A stretch of 64,000 nucleotides of DNA from Zootoca vivipara. Taxonomy: Eukaryota. Location: contig NC_083285.1 in assembly GCF_963506605.1 (NCBI RefSeq), forward strand, positions 69,378,001 through 69,442,000, in the 5' to 3' direction. Below, one piece after another: positions 392 through 62,765 of the stretch (position 1 is the first letter of the stretch; every line of letters begins with the position of its first letter). The position numbers were made by a program, and so were the translations under genes. The notes under the pieces are model-generated. The model did not search any database, was not told the origin of the DNA, and saw nothing but the letters and a program-made list of their open reading frames with translations.

Positions 392-10139
<9,748 letters not shown>

Positions 10140-21000: not shown

Positions 21001-24000
21001 GGTATTTTATCAAAGTAATTGTCGGAGTGAAATACAGTTAAGAAGTACAGTTGTACCTCTGCTTACATATCCCTCTGGATACGTAAACTTCGGGTTGCAA
21101 ACGCAGCAAACCCGGAAGTATATACTTCCAGGTTTTGTCACGCGCACATGCGCAGAAGCGCTCAATTGCGCCATACAAAGTTTTCAGGATGCGGCTGAGT
21201 CTCCTGAATGGATCCTGTTCGTAACCGGAGGTTACAATTAAGAAGAAGTATATTGGGGGGGGGCAAGAGAGTGGGGCCCTAAGCTATAGCTTGTTTAGCT
21301 TATACATAAATCTGGCACTGCTCACAGACACACGGGACAAAACTGATGTAATAAAGGAATGCAGAATATTTGTTACTTATGAAAAGTTGAAGCCGCAAGG
21401 AGATAGAGGGGGGAAGTCAACAAATACAGAAGGGATTCAAACAAGATTTCTTTAGCAGAAAGAAAGTGTCTGTAAAGAAAGTAAGAAAAGAGGGAGCATA
21501 AATGCAATTTCTTTCTGGGAACTTGGAGTACAGAAAAATCCAATTACTGTTTGAATCCTCTGAATAACTTTGTGTACATGATCAATTTCTTTTTTTTTTT
21601 TCCTGGATTTTCTTGTCTTTTTTCCTTTTTATAATTTTGTATTTTTTTTGTAGTTTTCTTTTTATTCTTCAAAGATGTGGGTGTGATGCTCAATATTGCT
21701 TTCTTTGTAAAAATAATAATAATATGCAATAAAGATTTAAAAATAAAGATAAAGGATAAAAATATACACCTAAGCTCTCTACTTCTTCTATCACGCTCAC
21801 CCCTTTCCCCCTGTTCCCTCCGCTCGTGATCCCTCCAGGTTACGACTGCCCGACCTCCGAAGGGATCTTTGACTATGCGGCCGCAGTAGGAGGAGCCACC
21901 ATCACGGCCGCCCAGTGCTTGGTGAACGGCGACTGCCGGGTTGCCATCAACTGGCCCGGAGGCTGGCATCACGCAAAGAAGTAAGGAAGTTCTGTCTTGT
22001 CTTGTTGCTTCTCCCAGACCCTGCATTCTTAGGCCTGTTCCACCTTGGCATCCGCCAGGCCTGCGGGGAGAGGAATCATAGAATCCCAGCACCCCCCAGG
22101 GGTCATAGAATCATAGAGTTGGAAGAGACCACAAGGGCCATCCATTCCAACCCCCTGCCAAGCAGGAAACACCATCAAAGCATTCTTGACATATGCCTGT
22201 CAAGCCTCTGCTTAAAGACCTCCAAAGAAGGAGACTCCACCACACTCCTTGGCAGCAAATTCCACTGCCGAACAGCTCTTACTGTCAGGAAGTTCTTCCT
22301 AATGTTTAGCTGGAATCTTCTTTCTTGTAGCTTGAATCCATTGCTCCGTGTCCGCTTCTCTGGGTCATCTAGTCCTAACTCCCTGCAAAGCAGGAATCTC
22401 GACTGAAGCATCCATGGCAGATGGGCATCCAACCTCTATATTTGACATAGATTTAGAACCTACTCACCATTGATTTTAAATTTGATTGTCCTGCACTTGT
22501 CTGTTTTGTTTGTTTGTTGTCTGTTCATTTTACTTTTACGCACCTTAAACTCGATGTAAAAACTTTAGATTTTTCAAATGTATACATTTCATTAGTTTTA
22601 CAATCCATTTAACATTTCAAAATTGGACTTCCTTCCCCCTCCTTCTACCGCTCCTTAAATTTATTTTTTAATATCTTCTGCATATCCAAATTCATTTAAC
22701 TTGCTCATTTCATTATCAACTATAAATAGATACTCTTATAAAACTGCAGGTTACTACAATAATCCTGCTAATGTAAAAACCTAATAATAATTTTTTAAAC
22801 TCCACCAGCATCTGAGGGAGTCTATTCTGCTGTCGAACGGCTCCTGCTGTTGGAAAGTTCTTCTTGATGTTGAGTCGGAATCTCCTTTCTTGTAACCTGA
22901 AGCCGTTGGTTTGGGTCCTACCCTCCAGAGCAGGAGAAAAGCAAGCTTGATCAATTTCCCCCTGGGATAGCCCTTTAGATACCTAAAGATGCCTATCATA
23001 TTTCCTCTCGGCTAGCTAAGCAGCTCAGGGTGATGACCAAGAAGGAGGGCAAGCAGTCCTAGCTGGTTAGAAACATGACTGAGGTCATTTCTGCAGCTGG
23101 GAATATTCCTCTTGCCTACCAGAGGGGGGAGACCTGCCATCAAAAATGTTCTGTCTTCTGGTTTGTCACTATCTATATTTATAATTTTTATTAGTTTTCC
23201 ATTTAGCGATATATAATCACATCATTATGATCCACTTTAGCTCCCTGGCTCTCTAGATCCTATCGACTTCCAAAATTAACTTTTATATCATAGCATTTTA
23301 TGCATTTTCCAATTCTAATGACACTCATTACAAAATACCTCCAAATTTAAATAAATATAAAAAGGGAGAAAACTTCTCATTGCAGGTCTTCAGACAACTC
23401 TGCTGGTGAAGTTAATTGCTTACAATAATCTTTCAAATATCGTATGAATTTACTCCAGTCCTTCTAGAATACTTGGTTGTGCTGGTTTTGGATTTTTCCC
23501 GTCAGCTTCTCCAGTTCCGCAAAGTCCATCATCTTCGTCTGCCTCTCTTCTTTTGTTGGTACTTCTTGATGTTTCCATCTTGGGGCTAAAAAGGATTCTT
23601 GCCGCGGTTGTCGCATCCATAAATAGTCTTTTATCTCCCCTTGGTATCTCTTCCCCCACTATACCCAGTAAAAAGGCTTCTGGTTTTTTAACAAAAGTTT
23701 TTAAAAATACTTTATTTAGCTCATTATATACCATTTCCTAGAAAGCCTTTCCCTCTTTACAAGTCCACCACATGTGGTAGAAGATACCTTTCCCCTCTTT
23801 ACATTTCCAGCACTCGTTAGTTCTTGTCTTGAAGATTTTAGCCAATTTAGCTGGTGTTAAATACCATCTGTACATCATTTTTGTAACATCTTCTTTAAGT
23901 GTGCTGCCTGCAGTAAAATTGATACCTTCCTTCCACAACCTTTCCCAGGATTCTAGCTGAATATTATATCCAAAATCTTTAGCCCATTGTAACCTCATCA

Positions 24001-55004: not shown

Positions 55005-58000
55005 GACAGGGGACATCCCTGAGGAGGTCAGTTCCCCAACACAGGACCCAGATGTATGAAGGAACGTGACTCATAGAAGCAGAAGGCCCAGGGATCGCTC
55101 TGAGTGTTTAGAACTACACAATCGATTTGAAGTGCTCTCCCTTAACACGGAAGACGAGGAACAGACTCCATTTGAAGATCTCTCCCTCATCACAGTTGAT
55201 CAGGAATATGAAGACGAGCAGCAAAGTCAGTCCTCCGGGAATATGCAGGTAACCTTGGAAGGGACAGCACATGGAAGAATCCTGAACAAGCCTATGAAGA
55301 GGCGTGTAGTGGTGATAGGGGATTCCCTACTGAGGGGTACAGAAGCAGTGATCTGTGGGCCTGACAAGATGTCTCGAGAGGTGTGCTGTCTCCCCGGGGC
55401 CAGGATCAAAGATGTAACAGAACGGCTGCAATGAATCATAAAACCCACTGATAAATACCCCTTCCTTTTGGTCCATGTGGGAACCAATGACACTGCAAGC
55501 CATAGCCTGCAGAAGATCAAAAGTGATTATGAAGCTCTGGGCAGGAAGTTGAAGCAATTAAATGCACAAATTGTCATCTCATCTGTCCTCCCAGTTGAAC
55601 AACATGGCCCAGGGAGAGAGGGAAAATAGGGGAAGTAAAAACCTGGCTTAGCAAATGGTGCAAACAGGAACGGTTTGAATTCTTAGATCACGGTCTGCAG
55701 TTTCTTGAAGATGGACTTCTGGCAACTGATGGGCTGCACCTCACAAAGGTTGTGAGGAATGTTTTTGCTATGAAACTCAAAAACCTCATCAGGAGGGCTT
55801 TAAACTGACTTATGTGGGGGAGGGAGACAGTGGTCCTGAAGGTAGGAGTCTATCAAGCACTGAAGATGTTCGTCCAAATGTCAAGGACCAAATGGAGCAA
55901 ACAGCATGCAGACCTAGTGGTGGGACGAAAATATCCTTAAATAAGAGACATGGGGGAATGATCAATGGTCTTCAATGTCTGTATACTAATGCACAGAGCA
56001 TGGGAAATAAACAAGATGAACTTGAGCTCTTGGTACAGCAAACTAAATATGACATAATAGGCATCACTGAAACCTGGTGGGATGAGTCTCATGATTGGAA
56101 TGTAGAAATAGAGGGATACAATCTATTTCAGAGAAATAGACCAAACAGGAAAGGAGGAGGAGTAGCGTTATATGTCAGGGATGTGTATACCTGTGAAGAG
56201 ATCCAGGATTAAAAACTTCAAAGCCAAATTGAGAGTATTTGGGTCAAAATTAAGGGAGAGAAAAATAACAGTGATCTCATTGTGGGAGTTTACTATAGAC
56301 CCCCAAGCCAAACTGAGGACACAGATGGTGCCTTCCTGGAACAGATGACCAAGCATTCTAAAGGAAGTGAGATAGTAGTAATGGGGGATTTCAACTATCC
56401 TGATATTTGTTGGATGTCAAACTCAGCCAAGAGCATAAGGTCGAACAGATTCCTCACTGGCCTTGCAGACAATTTCATTGTCCAAAAAGTGGGAGAAGCA
56501 ACAAGAGGATCAGCCATTTTAGATCTGGTCCTAACCAATAGTGATGACCTGGTTAGTGGGGTAGAAGTGGCAGGAGCATTAGGTGGGAGTGATCATGCTC
56601 TTCTGGAGTTTATTATTCAGAGGAAAGGAGCAACCAAGCATACTAAGACTCAAATCCTAGACTTTAAGAAAGCCGACTTCAGAAAACTTAGGGAAATGCT
56701 GGGTGAGATCCCATGGACAGAAATACTAAAAGGGAAGGGAGTTCATGATTGTTGGGAATTTGTAAAAAGGGAGATATTAAAAGCACAACTTCAGGCAATA
56801 CCAATGAGATGGAAACATGGAAGGTGCCTAAAGAAGCCAGGGTGGCTATCTAAAGAACTTTTAACTGAGTTAAGATTTAAAAGGGATATGTACAAAACAT
56901 GGAAAAAGGGGGAAATCACCAGAGAGGAATTCAAACAAATAGCCAGCACGTGTAGAGACAAAGTCAGAAAAGCTAAAGCACAGAATGAACTCAGGCTTGC
57001 TAGAGAGGTTAAAAGCAACAAAAAGGGCTTTTATGGGTATGTCCGTAGCAAAAGGAAGAACAAGGAAACAGTGGGGTCACTTAGAGGAGAAGATGGTGAA
57101 ATGCGAACAGGGAATAGAGAAAGGGCAGAACTCCTCAACGCCTTCTTTGCCTCAGTCTTCTCCAAAAAAGAAAACAATGCCCGACCTGAAGAATATGGAG
57201 CCGCTCATTCAGCAGGGGAAACACAGCCCAGAATAAGTAAGGAGGTAGTACAAGAATACTTGGCTAGTTTAGATGTATTCAAGTCTCCAGGGCCAGATGA
57301 ACTACATCCAAGAGTATTAAAAGAACTGGCAGAGGTGATTTCAGAACCACTGGCAATAATATTTGAAAATTCCTGGAGAACAGGCAAAGTTCCAGCAGAC
57401 TGGAGGAGGGCAAATATAGTCCCTATTTTCAAAAGGGGGAAAGGAGAGGACCCAAACAATTACGGCCCAGTCAGCCTGACATCAATACCAGGAAAGATTC
57501 TAGATCATTAAGCAAACGGTCTGTGAGCACCTAGAAAGAAATGCTGTGATCACTAAAAGTCAGCATGGGTTTCTGAAAAATAAATCATGTCAGACTAATC
57601 TGATCTCATTTTTTTACAGAATTACAAGGCTGGTAGATGAAGGGAACGCTGTGGATGTAGCCTATCTTGATTTCAGCAAGGCCTTTGACAAGGTGCCCCA
57701 TGATATTCTTGTAAAGAAGCTGGTAAAATGTGGGCTAGACAATGCTACCATTCAGTGGATTTGTAACTGGCTGACTGACTGAACCCAAAGGGTGCTCATC
57801 AATGGCTCCTCTTCATCCTGGAGAGTAGTGACTAGTGGGGTGCCACAGGGTTCTGTCTTGGGCCCAGTCTTATTCAACATCTTTATCAATGACTTGGATG
57901 ATGGGCTTGAGGGCACCCTGAGCAAGTTTGCAGATGACACCAAATTGGGAGGGGTGGCTAATACCCCAGAGGACAGGATCACACTTCAAAATGACCTTAA

Positions 58001-58251
58001 CAGATTAGACAACTGGGCCAAAGCAAACAAGATGACTTTTAACAAGGAGAAATGTAAAGTACTACACTTGGGCAAAAAAAATGAAAGGCACAAATACAGG
58101 ATGGGTGACACCTGGCTTGAGAGCAGTACATGTGAAAAGGATCTAGGAGTCTTGGTAGACCACAAACTTGACATGAGTCAGCAGTGTGATGCAGCAGCTA
58201 AAAAAGCCAATGCAATTCTGGGCTGCATCAATAGGAGTATATCATCTAGAT

Positions 58252-59320
58252 CAGCGTTTCTCAACCGCTGTTCCGCGGCACACTACTGTGCCGCGAGACG
58301 CTGGCTGGTGTGCCGGGACATGAGGCGACGAGAAGGGCGATTTGCGGCCGCCAATAGGCAGCGCTGACCCGCCGGAAAGGAAGCTGGCCGGGTCAGTCTG
58401 GAGGGCGCGGGGGCGCAAAGGGTGTTTCTCCGTCATCTCCTCGCGCTCGCTCCCTGAGCGAGGCAGCGCTTCATGGCCGCGCGCCTGGGCTGAGGGGCCA
58501 GGCTTGGAAGCGGGAACATCGAGGGACGGGGCGGATATCTCCGCCGCCGGACACAAAGCGCCGCCGACGCCGCTGCTTTCCGCAATCCCGGGAGAAGGAG
58601 GAGGAGGAGGCGGAGGCGGCGGAGGCTGCCCCTCGGGTCTCTCTCTCCGGCCCTTCCTCTCTCCCTCCTTGCGTATGAGTCAGGTATTTCCCAGCCCGCC
58701 GTCGGCAGCCGAGGCTGCCTCCTCGCGCTCTCCCCGCGCGCTCCATGGAGAAGGCAGCGGCGGCAGCGGCGCAGGGCGGCAGGGACTCCGGAGCAGCAGC
58801 AGCCCCGTCCAGCGGCGGCAATAACAGCAGCAGCCGCAGCAGCAGCCCCACCTCCTCGCCGTCCTCCTCCGCCAGCCAGGGAGGGCTCTCGGGCCGCCAA
58901 GGAGCAGCGGCGGCGGTGGCTACACCAGCGGGGAGGCCGGAGGGAGGCGGCGGTGGTGGCAGCAGCAGCCCCAGCTCAGCCACGGCCAGCCCAAGAGGGA
59001 GCGGGGGGCTGGCGGCAGGCAGGACGACAGAGGCGGTGCTCGAGGGCTCTCTCAGCAAGTACACCAACCTCATCCAGGGCTGGCAAAGCAGGTAAATGTT
59101 GTGGGAATGACCTCTCTCAGTCTCATTTTTTGGTGTGTGTGTGTGTGTGCCAGTGGGTCGACCTACTTCCTTTCCCCCCTGTCTCCCCACCCTCCCTATT
59201 CCTCAGTCCCCCACCCATTCCCAACCCCCAGGATTTGCCCCGTCTTTTAATGGTGGTGTGCCGCGTGATTTATTTCATGGAACAAGTGTGCCTTGGCCCA
59301 AAAAAGGTTGAGAAACACTG
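58252..59320 (+). mobile_element. hAT/Charlie-type Pack element carrying a host gene fragment
   Basis: TIR CAGCGTTTCTCAACC / GGTTGAGAAACACTG (14/15); 8-bp TSD ATCTAGAT; CR1 ORF2 is contiguous on both sides. Confidence 0.93.
58745..59091 (+). pseudogene. OSBPL10: Captured exon 1 of an OSBPL10-like gene (N-terminal low-complexity region plus start of PH domain)
   Basis: MEKAAA...NSSSRSSS...[19 protein letters not shown] followed by donor GTAAAT; matches the ORP10/11 PH-domain start as I recall it. Confidence 0.8.
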
Positions 59321-59989
59321 ATCTAGATCTAGGGAAGTAATAGTACCACTGTATTCTGCTCTGGTCAGACCTCACCTGGAGTACTGTGTCCAGTTCTGGG
59401 CACCACAGTTCAAGAAGGATACTGACAAGCTGGAACGTGTCCAGAAGAGGTCAACCAAAATTGTCAAAGGCCTGGAAACGATACCTTATGAGGAACGGCT
59501 TAGGGAGCTGGGTATGTTTAGCCTGGAGAAGAGAAGGTTAAGGGGTGATATGATAGCCATGTTGAAATATATTAAAGGATGCCATATAGAGGAGGGAGAA
59601 AGGTTGTTTTCTGCTGCTCCAGAGAAGCGGACATGGAGCAATGGATTCAAACTTCAAGAAAGAAGATTCCACCTAAACATTAGGAAGAACTTCCTGACAG
59701 TAAGAGCTGTTCGGCAGTGGAATTTGCTACCAAGGAGTGTGGTGGAGTCTCCTTCTTTGGAGGTCTTTAAGCAGAGGCTTGACAGGCATATGTCAAGAAT
59801 GCTTTGATGGTGTTTCCTGCTTGGCAGGGGGTTGGACTGGATGGCCCTTGTGGTCTCTTCCAACTTACGATTCTATTCTATGATTCTATTGTCCCACACT
59901 CCCACTACAAGCAAAATACTTCCTTATTTCTGGGTCATGTTTGCCCTTAAACAATAATCAACAGTGCCCTTTTGTGCTCCTTCCTATCT

Positions 59990-60125
59990 ATGCAAATGCA
60001 AAACCACTAGCCTCTCACTAAACTCTCCAGGGGATATAAATGACCCAGAACGGTTTGTGTTTGTCTCAGGTGAAGCGTGAATTGCCACCACAGCAGATCA
60101 ATCATCCATTCATCCAGGTGGACAG
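59990..60125 (+). promoter_or_regulatory. Probable promoter (octamer plus TATA) and non-coding exon 1 of the second lectin
   Basis: ATGCAAAT 59990-59997; TATAAA 60035-60040; CAG/GTGAGT donor at 60125. Confidence 0.55.
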
Positions 60126-60819
60126 GTGAGTAGCCAAGCTGGTCCCTTTGTCCAGGGTTCAACAGCAGCCAAATCCCTGCAGAAGAATCATACTGCACCG
60201 TGCAAGTGAATTCTCTTGACCTGGGTATGTTTTTCGGGGGCACCTCAATGCCCCAAGATCAGTGGTTTTCAACCAGTGTGCCATAGCACCCTGGGGTGCC
60301 TTGAAGGATGGCCGGGGTGCCCGGGCAACACTGGGCTCTGTCCCTCTGTCCTTCCCTTCCTCCTCTGATGCCCTCTTGCGACTCTGCCTCCCAAAGGCTT
60401 GCACAGCTGTTTGTTGCAGCAGCCCTGGCTACAAGATCCACAGGCGAATGGTGCCTCTGGGGCTGGCCAGGGGGTTTTGGTTTCCAGGAGCTGAGGTGGC
60501 CTCGGAGTAAGCAAGCCAGCAGGTGAGGGAGCCCAGCCAGCCAGTCGACCAGCCCTTGCTGTTGGGAATGGACAGACAACAAGTCCCAGGCCCCTTTGGG
60601 GCAGTGTGAGGAGGAACCTCTCCTTGGGGCAGCAGGTGGGGCAGCTCAGAGACCAGGGATGGCAGTGGCAGCTACCCAGAGGACTCCCAAGGAGAGGAGA
60701 GGAGATAAGAAGCTGAAGGAACACTCCACAAAGGAGGTTGGATTTGGCAATTGTCATAACAGATGGGGGGCATTCCAAAGGTTTGGCACCGATCACCTCT
60801 CTCAGGTCCATCTCCTCTT

Positions 60820-61045
60820 TCGTCTTGACACGGAACAAAATAAAAAAATTCCTTCCAGTAGCACCTTAGAGATCAACTAAGTTTGTCATTGGTATGAGCT
60901 TTTGTGTGTATGCAAAGTTCTTCAGATTGTGCATACACACGAAAGCTCATACCAATGACAAACTTATTTGGTCTCTAAGGTGCTACTGGAAGGAATTTAT
61001 TTCTTTTGGTTTCGACTACGGCAGACCAACACGGCTGCCTACCTG
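60820..61045. mobile_element. Short fold-back Penelope pLTR remnant
   Basis: GTAGCACCTTAGAGA...GAAAGCTCATACC...TAAGGTGCTAC; similar remnants at ~11310-11520, 18459-18610, 24115-24260. Confidence 0.7.
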
Positions 61046-61723: not shown

Positions 61724-62765
61724 ATGGGGGTTTTGGCTTTCTTTGGTCTCAGCTTCCTAATTGCTGCTCCTTTCTCGAGAGGTGAGTTCCATTCTTCCAG
61801 ACAGAGCTAGGGAGTGACCTTGGGCTCCTTGAGGAAATAGGGATAGAAATGAAACAAACATACATACATACATACATACATACATACATACATACATACA
61901 TAACTTTTTATTAGTAGAATATGAACTACAGTCATACCTCGGCTTAAGTACACCTCGGTTTGAGTACTTTCAGTTTAAGTACTCCGCGGACCCGTCTGGA
62001 ACGGATTAATCCACTTTCCAGTACTTTCAATGGGAAAGTTCACTTCATGTTAAGTACGCTTCGGGTTAAGTACGGACTTCCGGAACCAATTACACTCATA
62101 CTTCGGGTTAAGTACACTTCAGGTTGAGTACTCCGCGGACCCATCTGGAACAGATTAATCCACTTTCCATTACTTTCAATGGGAAAGGTCGCTTCAGGTT
62201 AAGTACACTTCAGGTTAAGTACAGACTTCCGGAACCAATTGTGTTTGTAAACCGAGGTACCACTGTATAGGGCAGGGGTCCCCAAACTACGGCCCGGGGG
62301 CCGGATGCGGCCCAATTGACCTGCCAATCCGGCCCGCGACGACCCCCGCCGCCCGCTCTTACGGTGCGCAGCACGGCAGCGCTCTTCCGGGTCGGGAAAA
62401 AAGCGCCGAAAATCCTTTGTGCGCATGCGTATGGGCCTCTCCCGACCCGGAAGAGGTCATTTCTGGTGCACTTCCGGGTTGGGGGAGGCCCATACGCATG
62501 CGCACAACGGATTTTCGGCGCTTTTTCCACCCTGGAAGCGCGCCGCCGCGCCAGTAAGTGCGCATGCGCACGAGCGCGCACTCCCCCACCCACCGGCCCG
62601 CACAGGCGCGCGCTCCCCCATCCTCCGGCCTGCCGCGCGATCGGCACGGTGGGAACCGGCCCAAACGCCAGTAAGTCTGGGGACCCCTGGTATAGGGAAT
62701 TGTACAATTGTGTAATATGCAGAAACAATGTTGTTGTTTAGTCGTTCAGTCGTGTCCCCTATAAA

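What the first reader, a model, noticed from the sequence alone, without database searches (positions are those of the whole stretch)
58244..59328. Pack-hAT: a DNA transposon carrying the upstream region, exon 1 and splice donor of an OSBPL10-like gene
Seen: a 1069-bp unit with 15-bp TIRs (CAGCGTTTCTCAACC / GGTTGAGAAACACTG) and an 8-bp TSD ATCTAGAT splits an otherwise contiguous CR1 ORF2; the CR1 copy near 8400 shows the empty site. Only ~70-80 bp at each end look transposon-like. The cargo is a CpG island with a CCAAT box (~58351), an open 116-codon exon ending ...[18 protein letters not shown], a GTAAAT donor and ~150 bp of intron-like sequence. Knowledge: 8-bp nTCTAGAn TSDs typify hAT-Charlie elements; this peptide is the start of the ORP10/11 PH domain; gene-capturing TIR elements are common in plants (Pack-MULEs) and less studied in vertebrates. 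Inference: the retained intron sequence means DNA-level capture rather than retrocopying. Intact CpGs suggest a recent event or an unmethylated copy.
Basis: partly seen in the sequence, partly recalled or inferred. Interest (0 to 1): 0.88.

Follow-up and report, generated by a model that had tools for sequence, protein, structure and literature searches.

The report
Lizard hAT transposon carrying OSBPL10 start
A 1,069-base cut-and-paste (hAT, SPIN-like) transposon sitting inside a CR1 retroelement of a lizard genome carries the CpG-island upstream region, the whole first coding exon and the splice donor of the gene OSBPL10, and read depth suggests that this gene-carrying element has multiplied to tens of copies, which is rare for vertebrates.

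Summary
Bases 58252-59320 form a 1,069-bp unit with 15-bp inverted ends (14/15) and a perfect 8-bp duplication, ATCTAGAT. Removing the unit and one duplicate restores an open CR1 ORF2. A CR1 copy at 8032-8542 shows the empty site.

The ends fit the lizard SPIN/Charlie-like hAT group: the right end matches a published Anolis SPIN end 16/16, and the duplication fits NYYTARRN. About 925 bp between the ends is host-derived:
- a CpG island (GC 0.70, o/e 0.80);
- a 116-codon ORF equal to OSBPL10 exon 1, from Met to ...GWQSR (turtle OSBPL10, E 1.5e-13);
- a CAG|GTAAAT donor and about 155 bp of intron-like sequence.

No other OSBPL10 exon lies in the window.

In two DNA runs of the species, cargo contigs reach about 10x to over 100x single-copy depth. 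A related species shows about 1-3x. Two equal-depth microhomology joints point to a commoner short form lacking the donor.

The scan noted the same cargo before on other DNA (s1-852026, 713 letters, DPM1 intron), unchecked.

This copy shows CpG decay and no transcription of its own. The same-genome parental locus and the junctions in long reads were not tested.

Verdict: a real Pack-hAT, a known kind, unusual for its probable amplification.

The parts
58244..58251 (.). Left copy of the 8-bp target-site duplication ATCTAGAT
   Evidence: The CR1 copy near 8404-8411 has a single ATCTAGAT.
58252..58266 (+). Left terminal inverted repeat CAGCGTTTCTCAACC
   Evidence: It has a YARNG terminus and is SPIN-like.
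58252..58320 (+). Left transposon-derived end. It holds a 9-bp-stem hairpin (58274-58295) and GTGTGCC(G/C)G subterminal motifs. The inner boundary is approximate.
   Evidence: (I17, D12, D15). The alignment with the right end and with the hAT end at 60260 holds to about column 65.
58321..58744 (+). Captured upstream region and 5' UTR of OSBPL10. It is a CpG island with CCAAT at 58351-58355.
   Evidence: (GC 0.70, o/e 0.95 for 58341-58744). Homology to the parental promoter is inferred from continuity with exon 1, not shown directly.
58745..59091 (+). Complete first coding exon of an OSBPL10-like gene: 115 codons plus 2 bases, running from Met to ...[17 protein letters not shown](R). It encodes only about the first 18 residues of the PH domain.
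59092..59247 (+). Splice donor GTAAAT (59092-59097) followed by intron-like sequence that includes a (GT)n run
   Evidence: record 11 of the related species (X15) is collinear over 58943-59179 at about single-copy depth.
59248..59320 (+). Right transposon-derived end with GGTGTGCCGCG and GTGTGCC motifs
   Evidence: the X15 loose end before 59248 shows that ordinary family members differ from here inward. Also.
59306..59320 (-). Right terminal inverted repeat. The reverse complement, extended by one base, reads CAGTGTTTCTCAACCT.
   Evidence: It matches the SPIN_NA1_AC consensus CAGTGKTTCTCAACCT 16/16.
59321..59328 (.). Right copy of the target-site duplication ATCTAGAT
58476..58707 (+). Segment absent from the commoner short form of the family. 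The deletion joint has 4-bp microhomology (GCCG).
   Evidence: table 5: joint 58475>58708, depth 698 in X1 and 263 in X2. The side is only 26 nt, so this is provisional.
59074..59190 (+). Segment absent from the commoner short form: the last 18 nt of the exon, the donor and 99 nt of intron. The joint has 2-bp microhomology (CC).
   Evidence: table 5: joint 59073>59191, depth 694 in X1 and 229 in X2. The side is only 28 nt, so this is provisional.
55066..59860 (+). Host element: a nearly full-length CR1 LINE (ORF1, then ORF2 with endonuclease and RT) that the transposon interrupts
8032..8542 (-). Paralogous CR1 copy showing the empty target site

Best explanation
This is a non-autonomous hAT transposon of the SPIN/Charlie-like group. 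Its interior has been replaced by about 925 bp of host DNA copied from the 5' end of the OSBPL10 gene: the CpG-island upstream region with 5' UTR, the whole first coding exon, the splice donor and the start of intron 1. It is a Pack-TIR, here a Pack-hAT.

Shown here:
- The unit inserted as one piece into a CR1 ORF2, with hAT-type ends and an 8-bp duplication.
- The interior is OSBPL10 exon 1 with its native exon-intron junction.
- It encodes no transposase.
- Cargo-like sequence is many-fold over single-copy depth in this species, but not in a related one.

Inferred:
- Capture took place at the DNA level, by repair synthesis or template switching into a hAT element, near or in contact with the OSBPL10 promoter.
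- The chimera was then mobilised in trans by a hAT transposase that recognises the ends and the subterminal GTGTGCCGCG motifs. It was amplified this way.
- Internal microhomology deletions produced a shorter, more successful form without the donor.
- The window's copy is one of roughly 10-30 long-form copies. It is young (perfect duplication, about 99% like the family majority) but already losing CpGs, and it is not detectably transcribed.
- It cannot make a working protein, because it encodes only a low-complexity N-terminus and the first strand of the PH domain.
- Its possible effect is as a portable promoter, first exon and donor when it lands in sense orientation in an intron.
For: - Structure: ends, duplication, empty site and restored CR1 frame.
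- Family: the right end fits CAGTGKTTCTCAACCT 16/16, the duplication fits NYYTARRN, and the termini fit YARNG (PMC3014272). Subterminal motifs occur only in the two ends and are shared with a neighbouring hAT end.
- Cargo identity: turtle OSBPL10 at E 1.5e-13, aligned over residues 35-116 and ending at ...GWQSR. The N-termini also begin alike ([12 protein letters not shown] against [13 protein letters not shown]). The five hits among 1.8 billion representatives are exon-1 read-through ORFs of OSBPL10-type genes. The PH domain starts at about residue 90.
- No second internal pair of ends, so this is one element with a replaced core, not two elements flanking a gene piece.
- Copy number. In X1, single-copy contigs have depth 17-18. 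The long-form contig over 58450-58585 has depth 173. Places from 58716 to 59029 have summed depth 1,270-2,490. In X2, single copy is about 4, against 39.9 and 270-1,030. In the related species X15, single copy is 35, against 27-97.
- Deletion forms: two joints of equal depth with 4-bp and 2-bp microhomology. A second OSBPL10-carrying hAT of 713 letters was noted in a DPM1 intron (unchecked). That is close to the 736 letters expected for the short form.
- Youth with decay: 5 of 7 listed differences from the family majority are CpG transitions in this copy.
Against:
- The copy-number estimate rests on summed depths of short Logan contigs, which the tool itself warns is not a copy number.
- The deletion joints have only 26-28 nt on the shorter side.
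- No listed contig bridges the CR1/transposon junctions or the transposon/cargo junctions. Presence or absence at this site cannot be told apart from paralogous CR1 copies.
- The upstream cargo in the related species is at least 98% identical at 2-3x depth. This is unexplained: it could be a conserved promoter, or a few copies there as well.
- The left cargo boundary is approximate.
- RNA shows at most 2 reads on the cargo, and they carry the family or parental letters, not this copy's.
Confidence: 0.82

Rival explanations
1. The element is a Pack-hAT, but it was formed in place. An ordinary hAT element already sitting in this CR1 suffered a break and was filled with OSBPL10 sequence. This is the transposition-independent gap filling that Tan et al. 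2021 propose for most animal Pack-TIRs. The chimera itself never moved.
For: In 100 animal genomes most Pack-TIRs are single-copy and fit this model (PMC8277862). No other copy lies in the 64-kb window.
Against: Cargo depth is about 10x to over 100x single copy in two independent runs of the species. A second copy of the same cargo between hAT ends was noted on another piece of the genome. The deletion-form joints have high and equal depth.
Confidence: 0.07
2. The element is a Pack-hAT that transposed, but it is low-copy (2-5 copies). The high summed depth comes from GC-rich, triplet-repeat-like contigs of unrelated loci laid at 90% likeness.
For: The cargo holds GCN and GGA triplet runs, and the tool skipped three repeat stretches. 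The tool warns that summed contig depth is not a copy number.
Against: The single non-repetitive contig over 58450-58585 has depth 173 against 17 in X1 and 39.9 against about 4 in X2. That is the same 10-fold ratio in two studies. Places 58982-59029 are not low-complexity, yet their depth is 1,800-2,500. The related species shows no such excess over the same letters.
Confidence: 0.1
3. This is the real OSBPL10 promoter and first exon, and the inverted ends and duplication are incidental.
For: The ORF is intact from Met to the donor, the CpG island is nearly intact, and intron 1 of OSBPL10 could be longer than the 4.7 kb left in the window.
Against: The unit interrupts a CR1 ORF2 precisely, with hAT ends and an 8-bp duplication, and an empty site is seen in a paralogue. 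The cargo is multicopy. No exon 2 lies anywhere in the 64 kb. RNA reads over the exon carry other letters than this copy.
Confidence: 0.01

Closest known systems
Pack-TIRs of animals, in particular Pack-hAT (Tan et al. 2021, Nat Commun 12:4280, PMC8277862)
   Same: A non-autonomous TIR element whose interior is a DNA-level copy of a host gene fragment, bounded by inverted ends and a target-site duplication. hAT is the commonest carrier (208 of 370). One frog case carries a 5' UTR piece and sits at three sites.
   Different: That survey found only 4 multicopy cases out of 370, and the one frog case described sits on three chromosomes. Here the depth suggests tens to over 100 copies. The cargo is a whole CpG-island upstream region plus the complete first coding exon and donor, not an arbitrary fragment. 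That paper's text does not mention lizards.
SPIN and related Charlie-like hAT families of Anolis carolinensis (Novick et al. 2010, PMC3014272)
   Same: The end sequence: CAGTGKTTCTCAACCT for SPIN_NA1_AC and CAGYGGTTCTCAACCT for SPIN_AC. The 8-bp duplication follows NYYTARRN and the terminus follows YARNG. Non-autonomous derivatives are a few hundred bp long.
   Different: The left end differs at 2 of 16 positions from the SPIN_AC consensus. Internal homology to SPIN consensus sequences could not be tested, because no repeat library was available. That paper reports no gene capture for these families: 'captured' has 0 occurrences.
Pack-MULEs of rice
   Same: Gene-fragment capture by a cut-and-paste element followed by amplification. 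They prefer to duplicate GC-rich sequence and are associated with gene 5' ends and open chromatin (PMC5861414). That parallels this CpG-island cargo and the other 5'-end cargoes noted in this genome.
   Different: A different superfamily (Mutator, with 8-11 bp duplications and long ends) and a different kingdom. The bias toward 5' CpG islands in this lizard is only a lead from unchecked notes.

Membership tests
hAT superfamily (non-autonomous member) | 8-bp target-site duplication flanking the element | tested here: met
   ATCTAGAT occurs on both sides, and a single copy sits at the empty site of a CR1 paralogue.
hAT superfamily (non-autonomous member) | Short terminal inverted repeats with a YARNG terminal motif | tested here: met
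   The ends are 15 bp and match 14/15. The termini are CAGCG and CAGTG. The criterion is as stated in PMC3014272.
hAT superfamily (non-autonomous member) | Mobilised by a hAT transposase, that is, an autonomous partner in the genome | not testable with these tools
   The window holds no transposase ORF of this family, and no whole-genome search was available.
SPIN / Charlie-like hAT group of squamates | End consensus CAGYGGTTCTCAACCT or CAGTGKTTCTCAACCT | tested here: met
   The right end matches SPIN_NA1_AC 16/16. The left end matches SPIN_AC 14/16.
SPIN / Charlie-like hAT group of squamates | Target consensus NYYTARRN | tested here: met
   ATCTAGAT fits at every position.
SPIN / Charlie-like hAT group of squamates | Subterminal or internal sequence homology to the family consensus | not testable with these tools
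   No Repbase or Dfam library was available. Only a related end at 60260 in the window could be aligned.
Pack-TIR (gene-fragment-carrying TIR element) | Interior derived from a host gene rather than from the transposon | tested here: met
   The 116-codon ORF equals OSBPL10 exon 1 from Met to the conserved exon end, followed by a GT donor.
Pack-TIR (gene-fragment-carrying TIR element) | A separate parental locus exists in the same genome | tested here: inconclusive
   The parent was not isolated. A related species has a contig of about single-copy depth that is collinear across exon end, donor and intron. RNA reads over the exon carry non-window letters.
Pack-TIR (gene-fragment-carrying TIR element) | No transposase coding capacity | tested here: met
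   The unit is 1,069 bp. Its ORFs are the OSBPL10 exon and GC-rich spurious frames. Pfam finds nothing on the exon ORF.
Multicopy (transposed-after-capture) Pack-TIR | Several copies with the same chimeric structure and different target duplications | tested here: inconclusive
   Depth is about 10x to over 100x single copy in two runs. One further copy is known only from an unchecked note. The duplications of other copies were not seen.
Genuine OSBPL10 locus | Exon 1 lies in native context and is followed by exon 2; the sequence is single-copy | tested here: not met
   The exon lies inside a transposon inside a CR1. No exon 2 lies in the 64 kb. Depth is multicopy.

The most novel reading that the evidence does not exclude
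This lizard lineage may have an active process, comparable to rice Pack-MULEs, in which hAT elements (and possibly Tc1/mariner elements) repeatedly pick up CpG-island promoters with first exons. On this reading the OSBPL10-carrying element is an amplified family of tens to over 100 copies. It would scatter a ready-made promoter, start codon and, in its long form, a splice donor into introns of other genes, creating alternative first exons. The 5'-end bias rests on unchecked notes from the scan (OSBPL10 twice, AP4E1, UNC13B, MCAT, NRG1, BMP8-like).
Probability: 0.3. Interest if true: 0.78.

Novelty: new member of a known kind. Interest (0 to 1): 0.55.

Why it matters
Gene capture by cut-and-paste transposons is well documented in plants. 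In animals it was surveyed only recently: 370 cases in 100 genomes, almost all single-copy and explained without transposition (PMC8277862).

A vertebrate element that captured a complete CpG-island upstream region, start codon, first exon and donor, and then multiplied, would be a clear example of transposition-dependent spread of a promoter and first-exon module. It would give a natural test of three questions:
- Does a CpG island keep its unmethylated state when moved? This copy suggests not.
- How often do such modules create chimeric first exons?
- Why do deletion derivatives out-compete the original?

Together with the other 5'-end cargoes noted in this genome, it points to a capture bias toward open, GC-rich promoter DNA in a vertebrate.

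Tried and rejected
- The search of earlier findings by sequence gave nothing.
- The search for homologous proteins returned only one length-compatible hit, a partial turtle OSBPL10. No near-identical lizard ORFs were found, so no parental contig could be fetched.
- Pfam on the 116-aa ORF found no family, as expected, since only about 18 residues of the PH domain are present.
- A BLAST of the ends and the cargo within the window found no further copy of either.
- A composite of two complete hAT elements flanking a gene piece was rejected. No internal end-like sequence occurs within 3 mismatches, and only about 70 bp at each end is transposon-like.
- Retrocopy was rejected. The upstream region, the donor and the intron sequence are all present, and there is no poly(A).
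- Presence or absence of the insertion in other individuals could not be decided. The joints 58243>59321 and 58253>59331 are indistinguishable from paralogous CR1 copies without an insertion.
- Expression of this copy is not supported. At most 2 RNA reads lie on the cargo in about 6% of one run, and they carry the family or parental letters.
- Reads that resemble human DNA are dropped silently by the reads tool, so low RNA depth over the conserved end of the exon is not evidence of silence.
Full report
**Observation**

- ATCTAGAT lies at 58244-58251 and again at 59321-59328.
- Directly inside lie CAGCGTTTCTCAACC (58252-58266) and, at 59306-59320, the reverse complement of CAGTGTTTCTCAACC. This is a 14/15 inverted repeat.
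- With up to one mismatch, this 15-mer occurs only at these two places in the 64 kb.
- The unit 58252-59320 is 1,069 bp.

The unit sits in a nearly full-length CR1 LINE (55066-59860, plus strand). Pfam finds endonuclease and RVT_1 domains in its ORF2. Three results show a precise insertion:
- The two flanks, joined with one ATCTAGAT, align without a break at 96.7% over 511 bp to another CR1 copy at 8542-8032.
- The translated CR1 ORF2 reads straight through (...[26 protein letters not shown]...) to its normal stop.
- The removed stretch is 1,077 bases, a multiple of three.

This is a precise insertion with an empty-site control. It is not a chance inverted repeat and not the kind of structure an assembly error produces.

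**What the ends are**

About 69 bp on the left and 73 bp on the right are transposon-like.
- Both ends carry the motif GTGTGCCGCG or near variants. In the window this motif occurs only there.
- The left end has a 9-bp-stem hairpin (I17).
- Both ends align with the left end of another hAT-like element at 60260 for about 65 columns.
- In a related species, contigs that match from 59248 outward carry different letters further in. This marks where ordinary family members and this element part company (table 7).

Novick et al. (PMC3014272) give 8-bp duplications and YARNG termini as the hAT hallmarks. For the Anolis SPIN families they list the ends CAGYGGTTCTCAACCT and CAGTGKTTCTCAACCT, with the target NYYTARRN.
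- The right end here, extended by one base, matches the second consensus 16/16.
- The left end matches the first 14/16.
- ATCTAGAT fits NYYTARRN at every position.

An earlier follow-up in this genome used the same label for another element. Homology to SPIN consensus interiors could not be tested.

**What the cargo is**

Region 58300-59100 is a CpG island: GC 0.705, o/e 0.80, 79 CpGs. The CR1 flanks have o/e 0.14-0.20.

The ORF 58745-59092 (116 codons) has these matches:
- In the 5.8-billion-protein search it hit one protein, a partial turtle OSBPL10, at E 1.5e-13.
- The BLASTP alignment covers residues 35-116 and ends at ...[18 protein letters not shown] against turtle ...LEGALSKYTNLLQGWQSR. 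The two N-termini also begin alike ([12 protein letters not shown] against [13 protein letters not shown]).
- A full HMMER scan of 1.8 billion representatives gave five hits. Four end, or change character, at ...GWQS/NR, so they look like exon-1 read-through ORFs of OSBPL10 orthologues. The top hit is a repeated PH-start motif.

The ORF's stop codon overlaps the donor: CAG|GTAAAT, with the exon ending at 59091 and the arginine codon split after two bases. In the turtle protein the PH domain starts at about residue 90. The cargo therefore encodes a low-complexity N-terminus plus only the first strand of that domain, so no functional protein can be expected from it alone.

tblastn with the 200-aa turtle fragment finds no further OSBPL10 exon anywhere in the window.

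The upstream region and the donor with intron-like sequence rule out a retrocopy. No internal end-like sequence exists, so this is one element with a replaced core and not two elements flanking a gene piece.

**Copies elsewhere**

No tool here searches this genome, so I used the one reads call. Three runs were Logan contig sets: two of this species from different studies (X1, X2) and one of a related species (X15). The fourth was raw RNA reads (X21).

| Place | X1 (this species) | X2 (this species) | X15 (related species) |
|---|---|---|---|
| Single-copy contigs (unique flank 59866-60210 or equivalent) | 17-18 | about 4 | 35 |
| Contig over 58450-58585 (a non-repetitive part of the upstream cargo) | 173 | 39.9 | 77-84 |
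| Non-repetitive places from 58716 to 59029, summed | 1,270-2,490 | 270-1,030 | 27-97 |

The contig over 58450-58585 is about ten-fold over single copy in both runs of this species. The exon places are roughly 60 to 200-fold over single copy in this species and 0.75 to 2.7-fold in the related one.

Two joints have nearly equal depth and short microhomology:
- 58475>58708: depth 698 in X1 and 263 in X2, with GCCG at the joint.
- 59073>59191: depth 694 in X1 and 229 in X2, with CC at the joint.

Read together, they describe a commoner short form of about 40-55 copies. It lacks 232 bp of the upstream region. It also lacks 117 bp covering the exon end, the donor and part of the intron. With both duplications this form would be about 736 letters.

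The scan's notes hold another first-reader finding on a different piece of this genome: 'hAT Pack-TIR carrying a captured OSBPL10 promoter and exon 1 inside DPM1 intron 2', 713 letters. I could not read that sequence, so it is a lead and not proof. It does agree in size and content with the predicted short form.

I conclude that the chimera very probably transposed after capture, and that the window holds one of roughly 10-30 long-form copies that still have the donor.

Caveats:
- Summed contig depth is a rough proxy.
- The joints have only 26-28 nt on the shorter side.
- No listed contig bridges a junction.

**Parent**

The related species has a 260-nt contig at about single-copy depth (26.7). 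It is collinear with 58943-59179, that is, across the exon end, the donor and 88 nt of intron. It shows 14 substitutions and 3 gaps. That is about the same divergence as the unique flank (about 17 differences in 295 bp). This is what the orthologous OSBPL10 locus should look like, and it supports DNA-level capture of a native exon-intron junction.

The parental locus of this genome itself was not seen.

One point is unexplained. The upstream-cargo contigs of the related species are at least 98% identical to the window, at 2-3x depth. Either the promoter is very conserved, or a few copies exist there as well.

**Age and state of this copy**

Seven differences between the window and the majority letters of the family are listed: 58500, 58537, 58716, 58917, 58982, 58994 and 59029. 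At five of them the majority has CpG and the window has TpG or CpA (read). Four of these majority letters are also the letters of the related species.

The copy is therefore young: a perfect duplication and about 99% identity to the family. It is nonetheless decaying in the way methylated DNA does.

RNA reads on the cargo are at most two, from about 6% of one run. They carry the majority letters, so nothing shows that this copy is transcribed. The reads tool silently drops human-like reads, so low depth over the conserved exon end is not evidence of silence.

**Mechanism**

Shown:
- a one-piece insertion with hAT signatures;
- a host-gene core with a native exon-intron junction;
- no transposase;
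- multicopy depth in this species only.

Inferred:
- Capture happened by repair synthesis or template switching into a hAT element at or near the OSBPL10 promoter. [quoted passage not shown]
- The chimera was mobilised in trans through the ends and subterminal motifs.
- Microhomology deletions gave a shorter, more prolific derivative.

The window also holds a separate, very high-copy hAT element that is nearly absent from the related species (62273-62689; see noticed in passing). This fits recent hAT activity in this lineage.

**Comparison with what is known**

Pack-TIRs in animals are described: 370 in 100 genomes, 208 on hAT elements. Only four were multicopy, and most are explained without transposition (PMC8277862). 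This element belongs to that kind.

It stands out in two respects:
- its probable copy number;
- its cargo, which is a whole CpG-island upstream region, first exon and donor module.

[quoted passage not shown] The scan's unchecked notes list several further 5'-end cargoes in this genome: AP4E1, UNC13B, MCAT, NRG1 and BMP8-like. A similar bias may therefore operate here. That remains a lead only.

**Verdict**

- Novelty: a new member of a known kind, with an unusual and still provisional amplification.
- Confidence that this is a Pack-hAT carrying the OSBPL10 5' end: about 0.9.
- Confidence that it is a family of ten or more copies: about 0.75.
- The scan had noted the same cargo before on other DNA (s1-852026).

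Noticed in passing
window 62265-62697: A second, unrelated non-autonomous hAT element of 417 bp (62273-62689). Its ends are CAGGGGTCCCCAAACT and its near reverse complement, which fits the Anolis hAT-N4_AC consensus CAGGGGTCCYCAAACT. It has a perfect 8-bp duplication, GTATAGGG, and a CpG-rich, internally palindromic core. Depth is 70,000-240,000 in X1 (thousands of copies) but only about 300 in the related species. This suggests a recent lineage-specific burst.
   Followed up: partly
window 60260-60830: The left end of another SPIN-like hAT element: CAGTGGTTTTCAACC followed by GTGCC-type subterminal motifs. No matching right end occurs within 3 mismatches in the window. Depth is 12,000-56,000 in X1. 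It is followed at about 60837-61022 by a hairpin-type MITE. For that MITE, DNA and RNA records show an 'opposite strands' joint.
   Followed up: partly
window 61937-62265: A repeat built of two units of about 150 bp (GGTTAAGTAC-type motifs). The hAT at 62273 is inserted next to it. A 151-bp skipping joint, 61992>62144, is seen in both DNA and RNA. RNA depth is strongly one-sided (about 900-1,070 against 100-200).
   Followed up: no
window 55066-59860: The host CR1 is nearly full length. It has an ORF1-like frame (55066-55434) and an ORF2 broken into a few pieces. ORF2 is open over the last 313 codons once the transposon is removed. It is 96-97% identical to the copies at 7840-8542 and 22105-22363, which marks a young CR1 family.
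   Followed up: partly
window 58450-58780, in the related species (run X15): Upstream-cargo contigs of the related species are at least 98% identical to the window at 2-3x single-copy depth. The exon-end and intron contig, and the unique flank, differ by about 6%. Either the OSBPL10 promoter and 5' UTR are unusually conserved, or that species also holds a few copies of the element.
   Followed up: no
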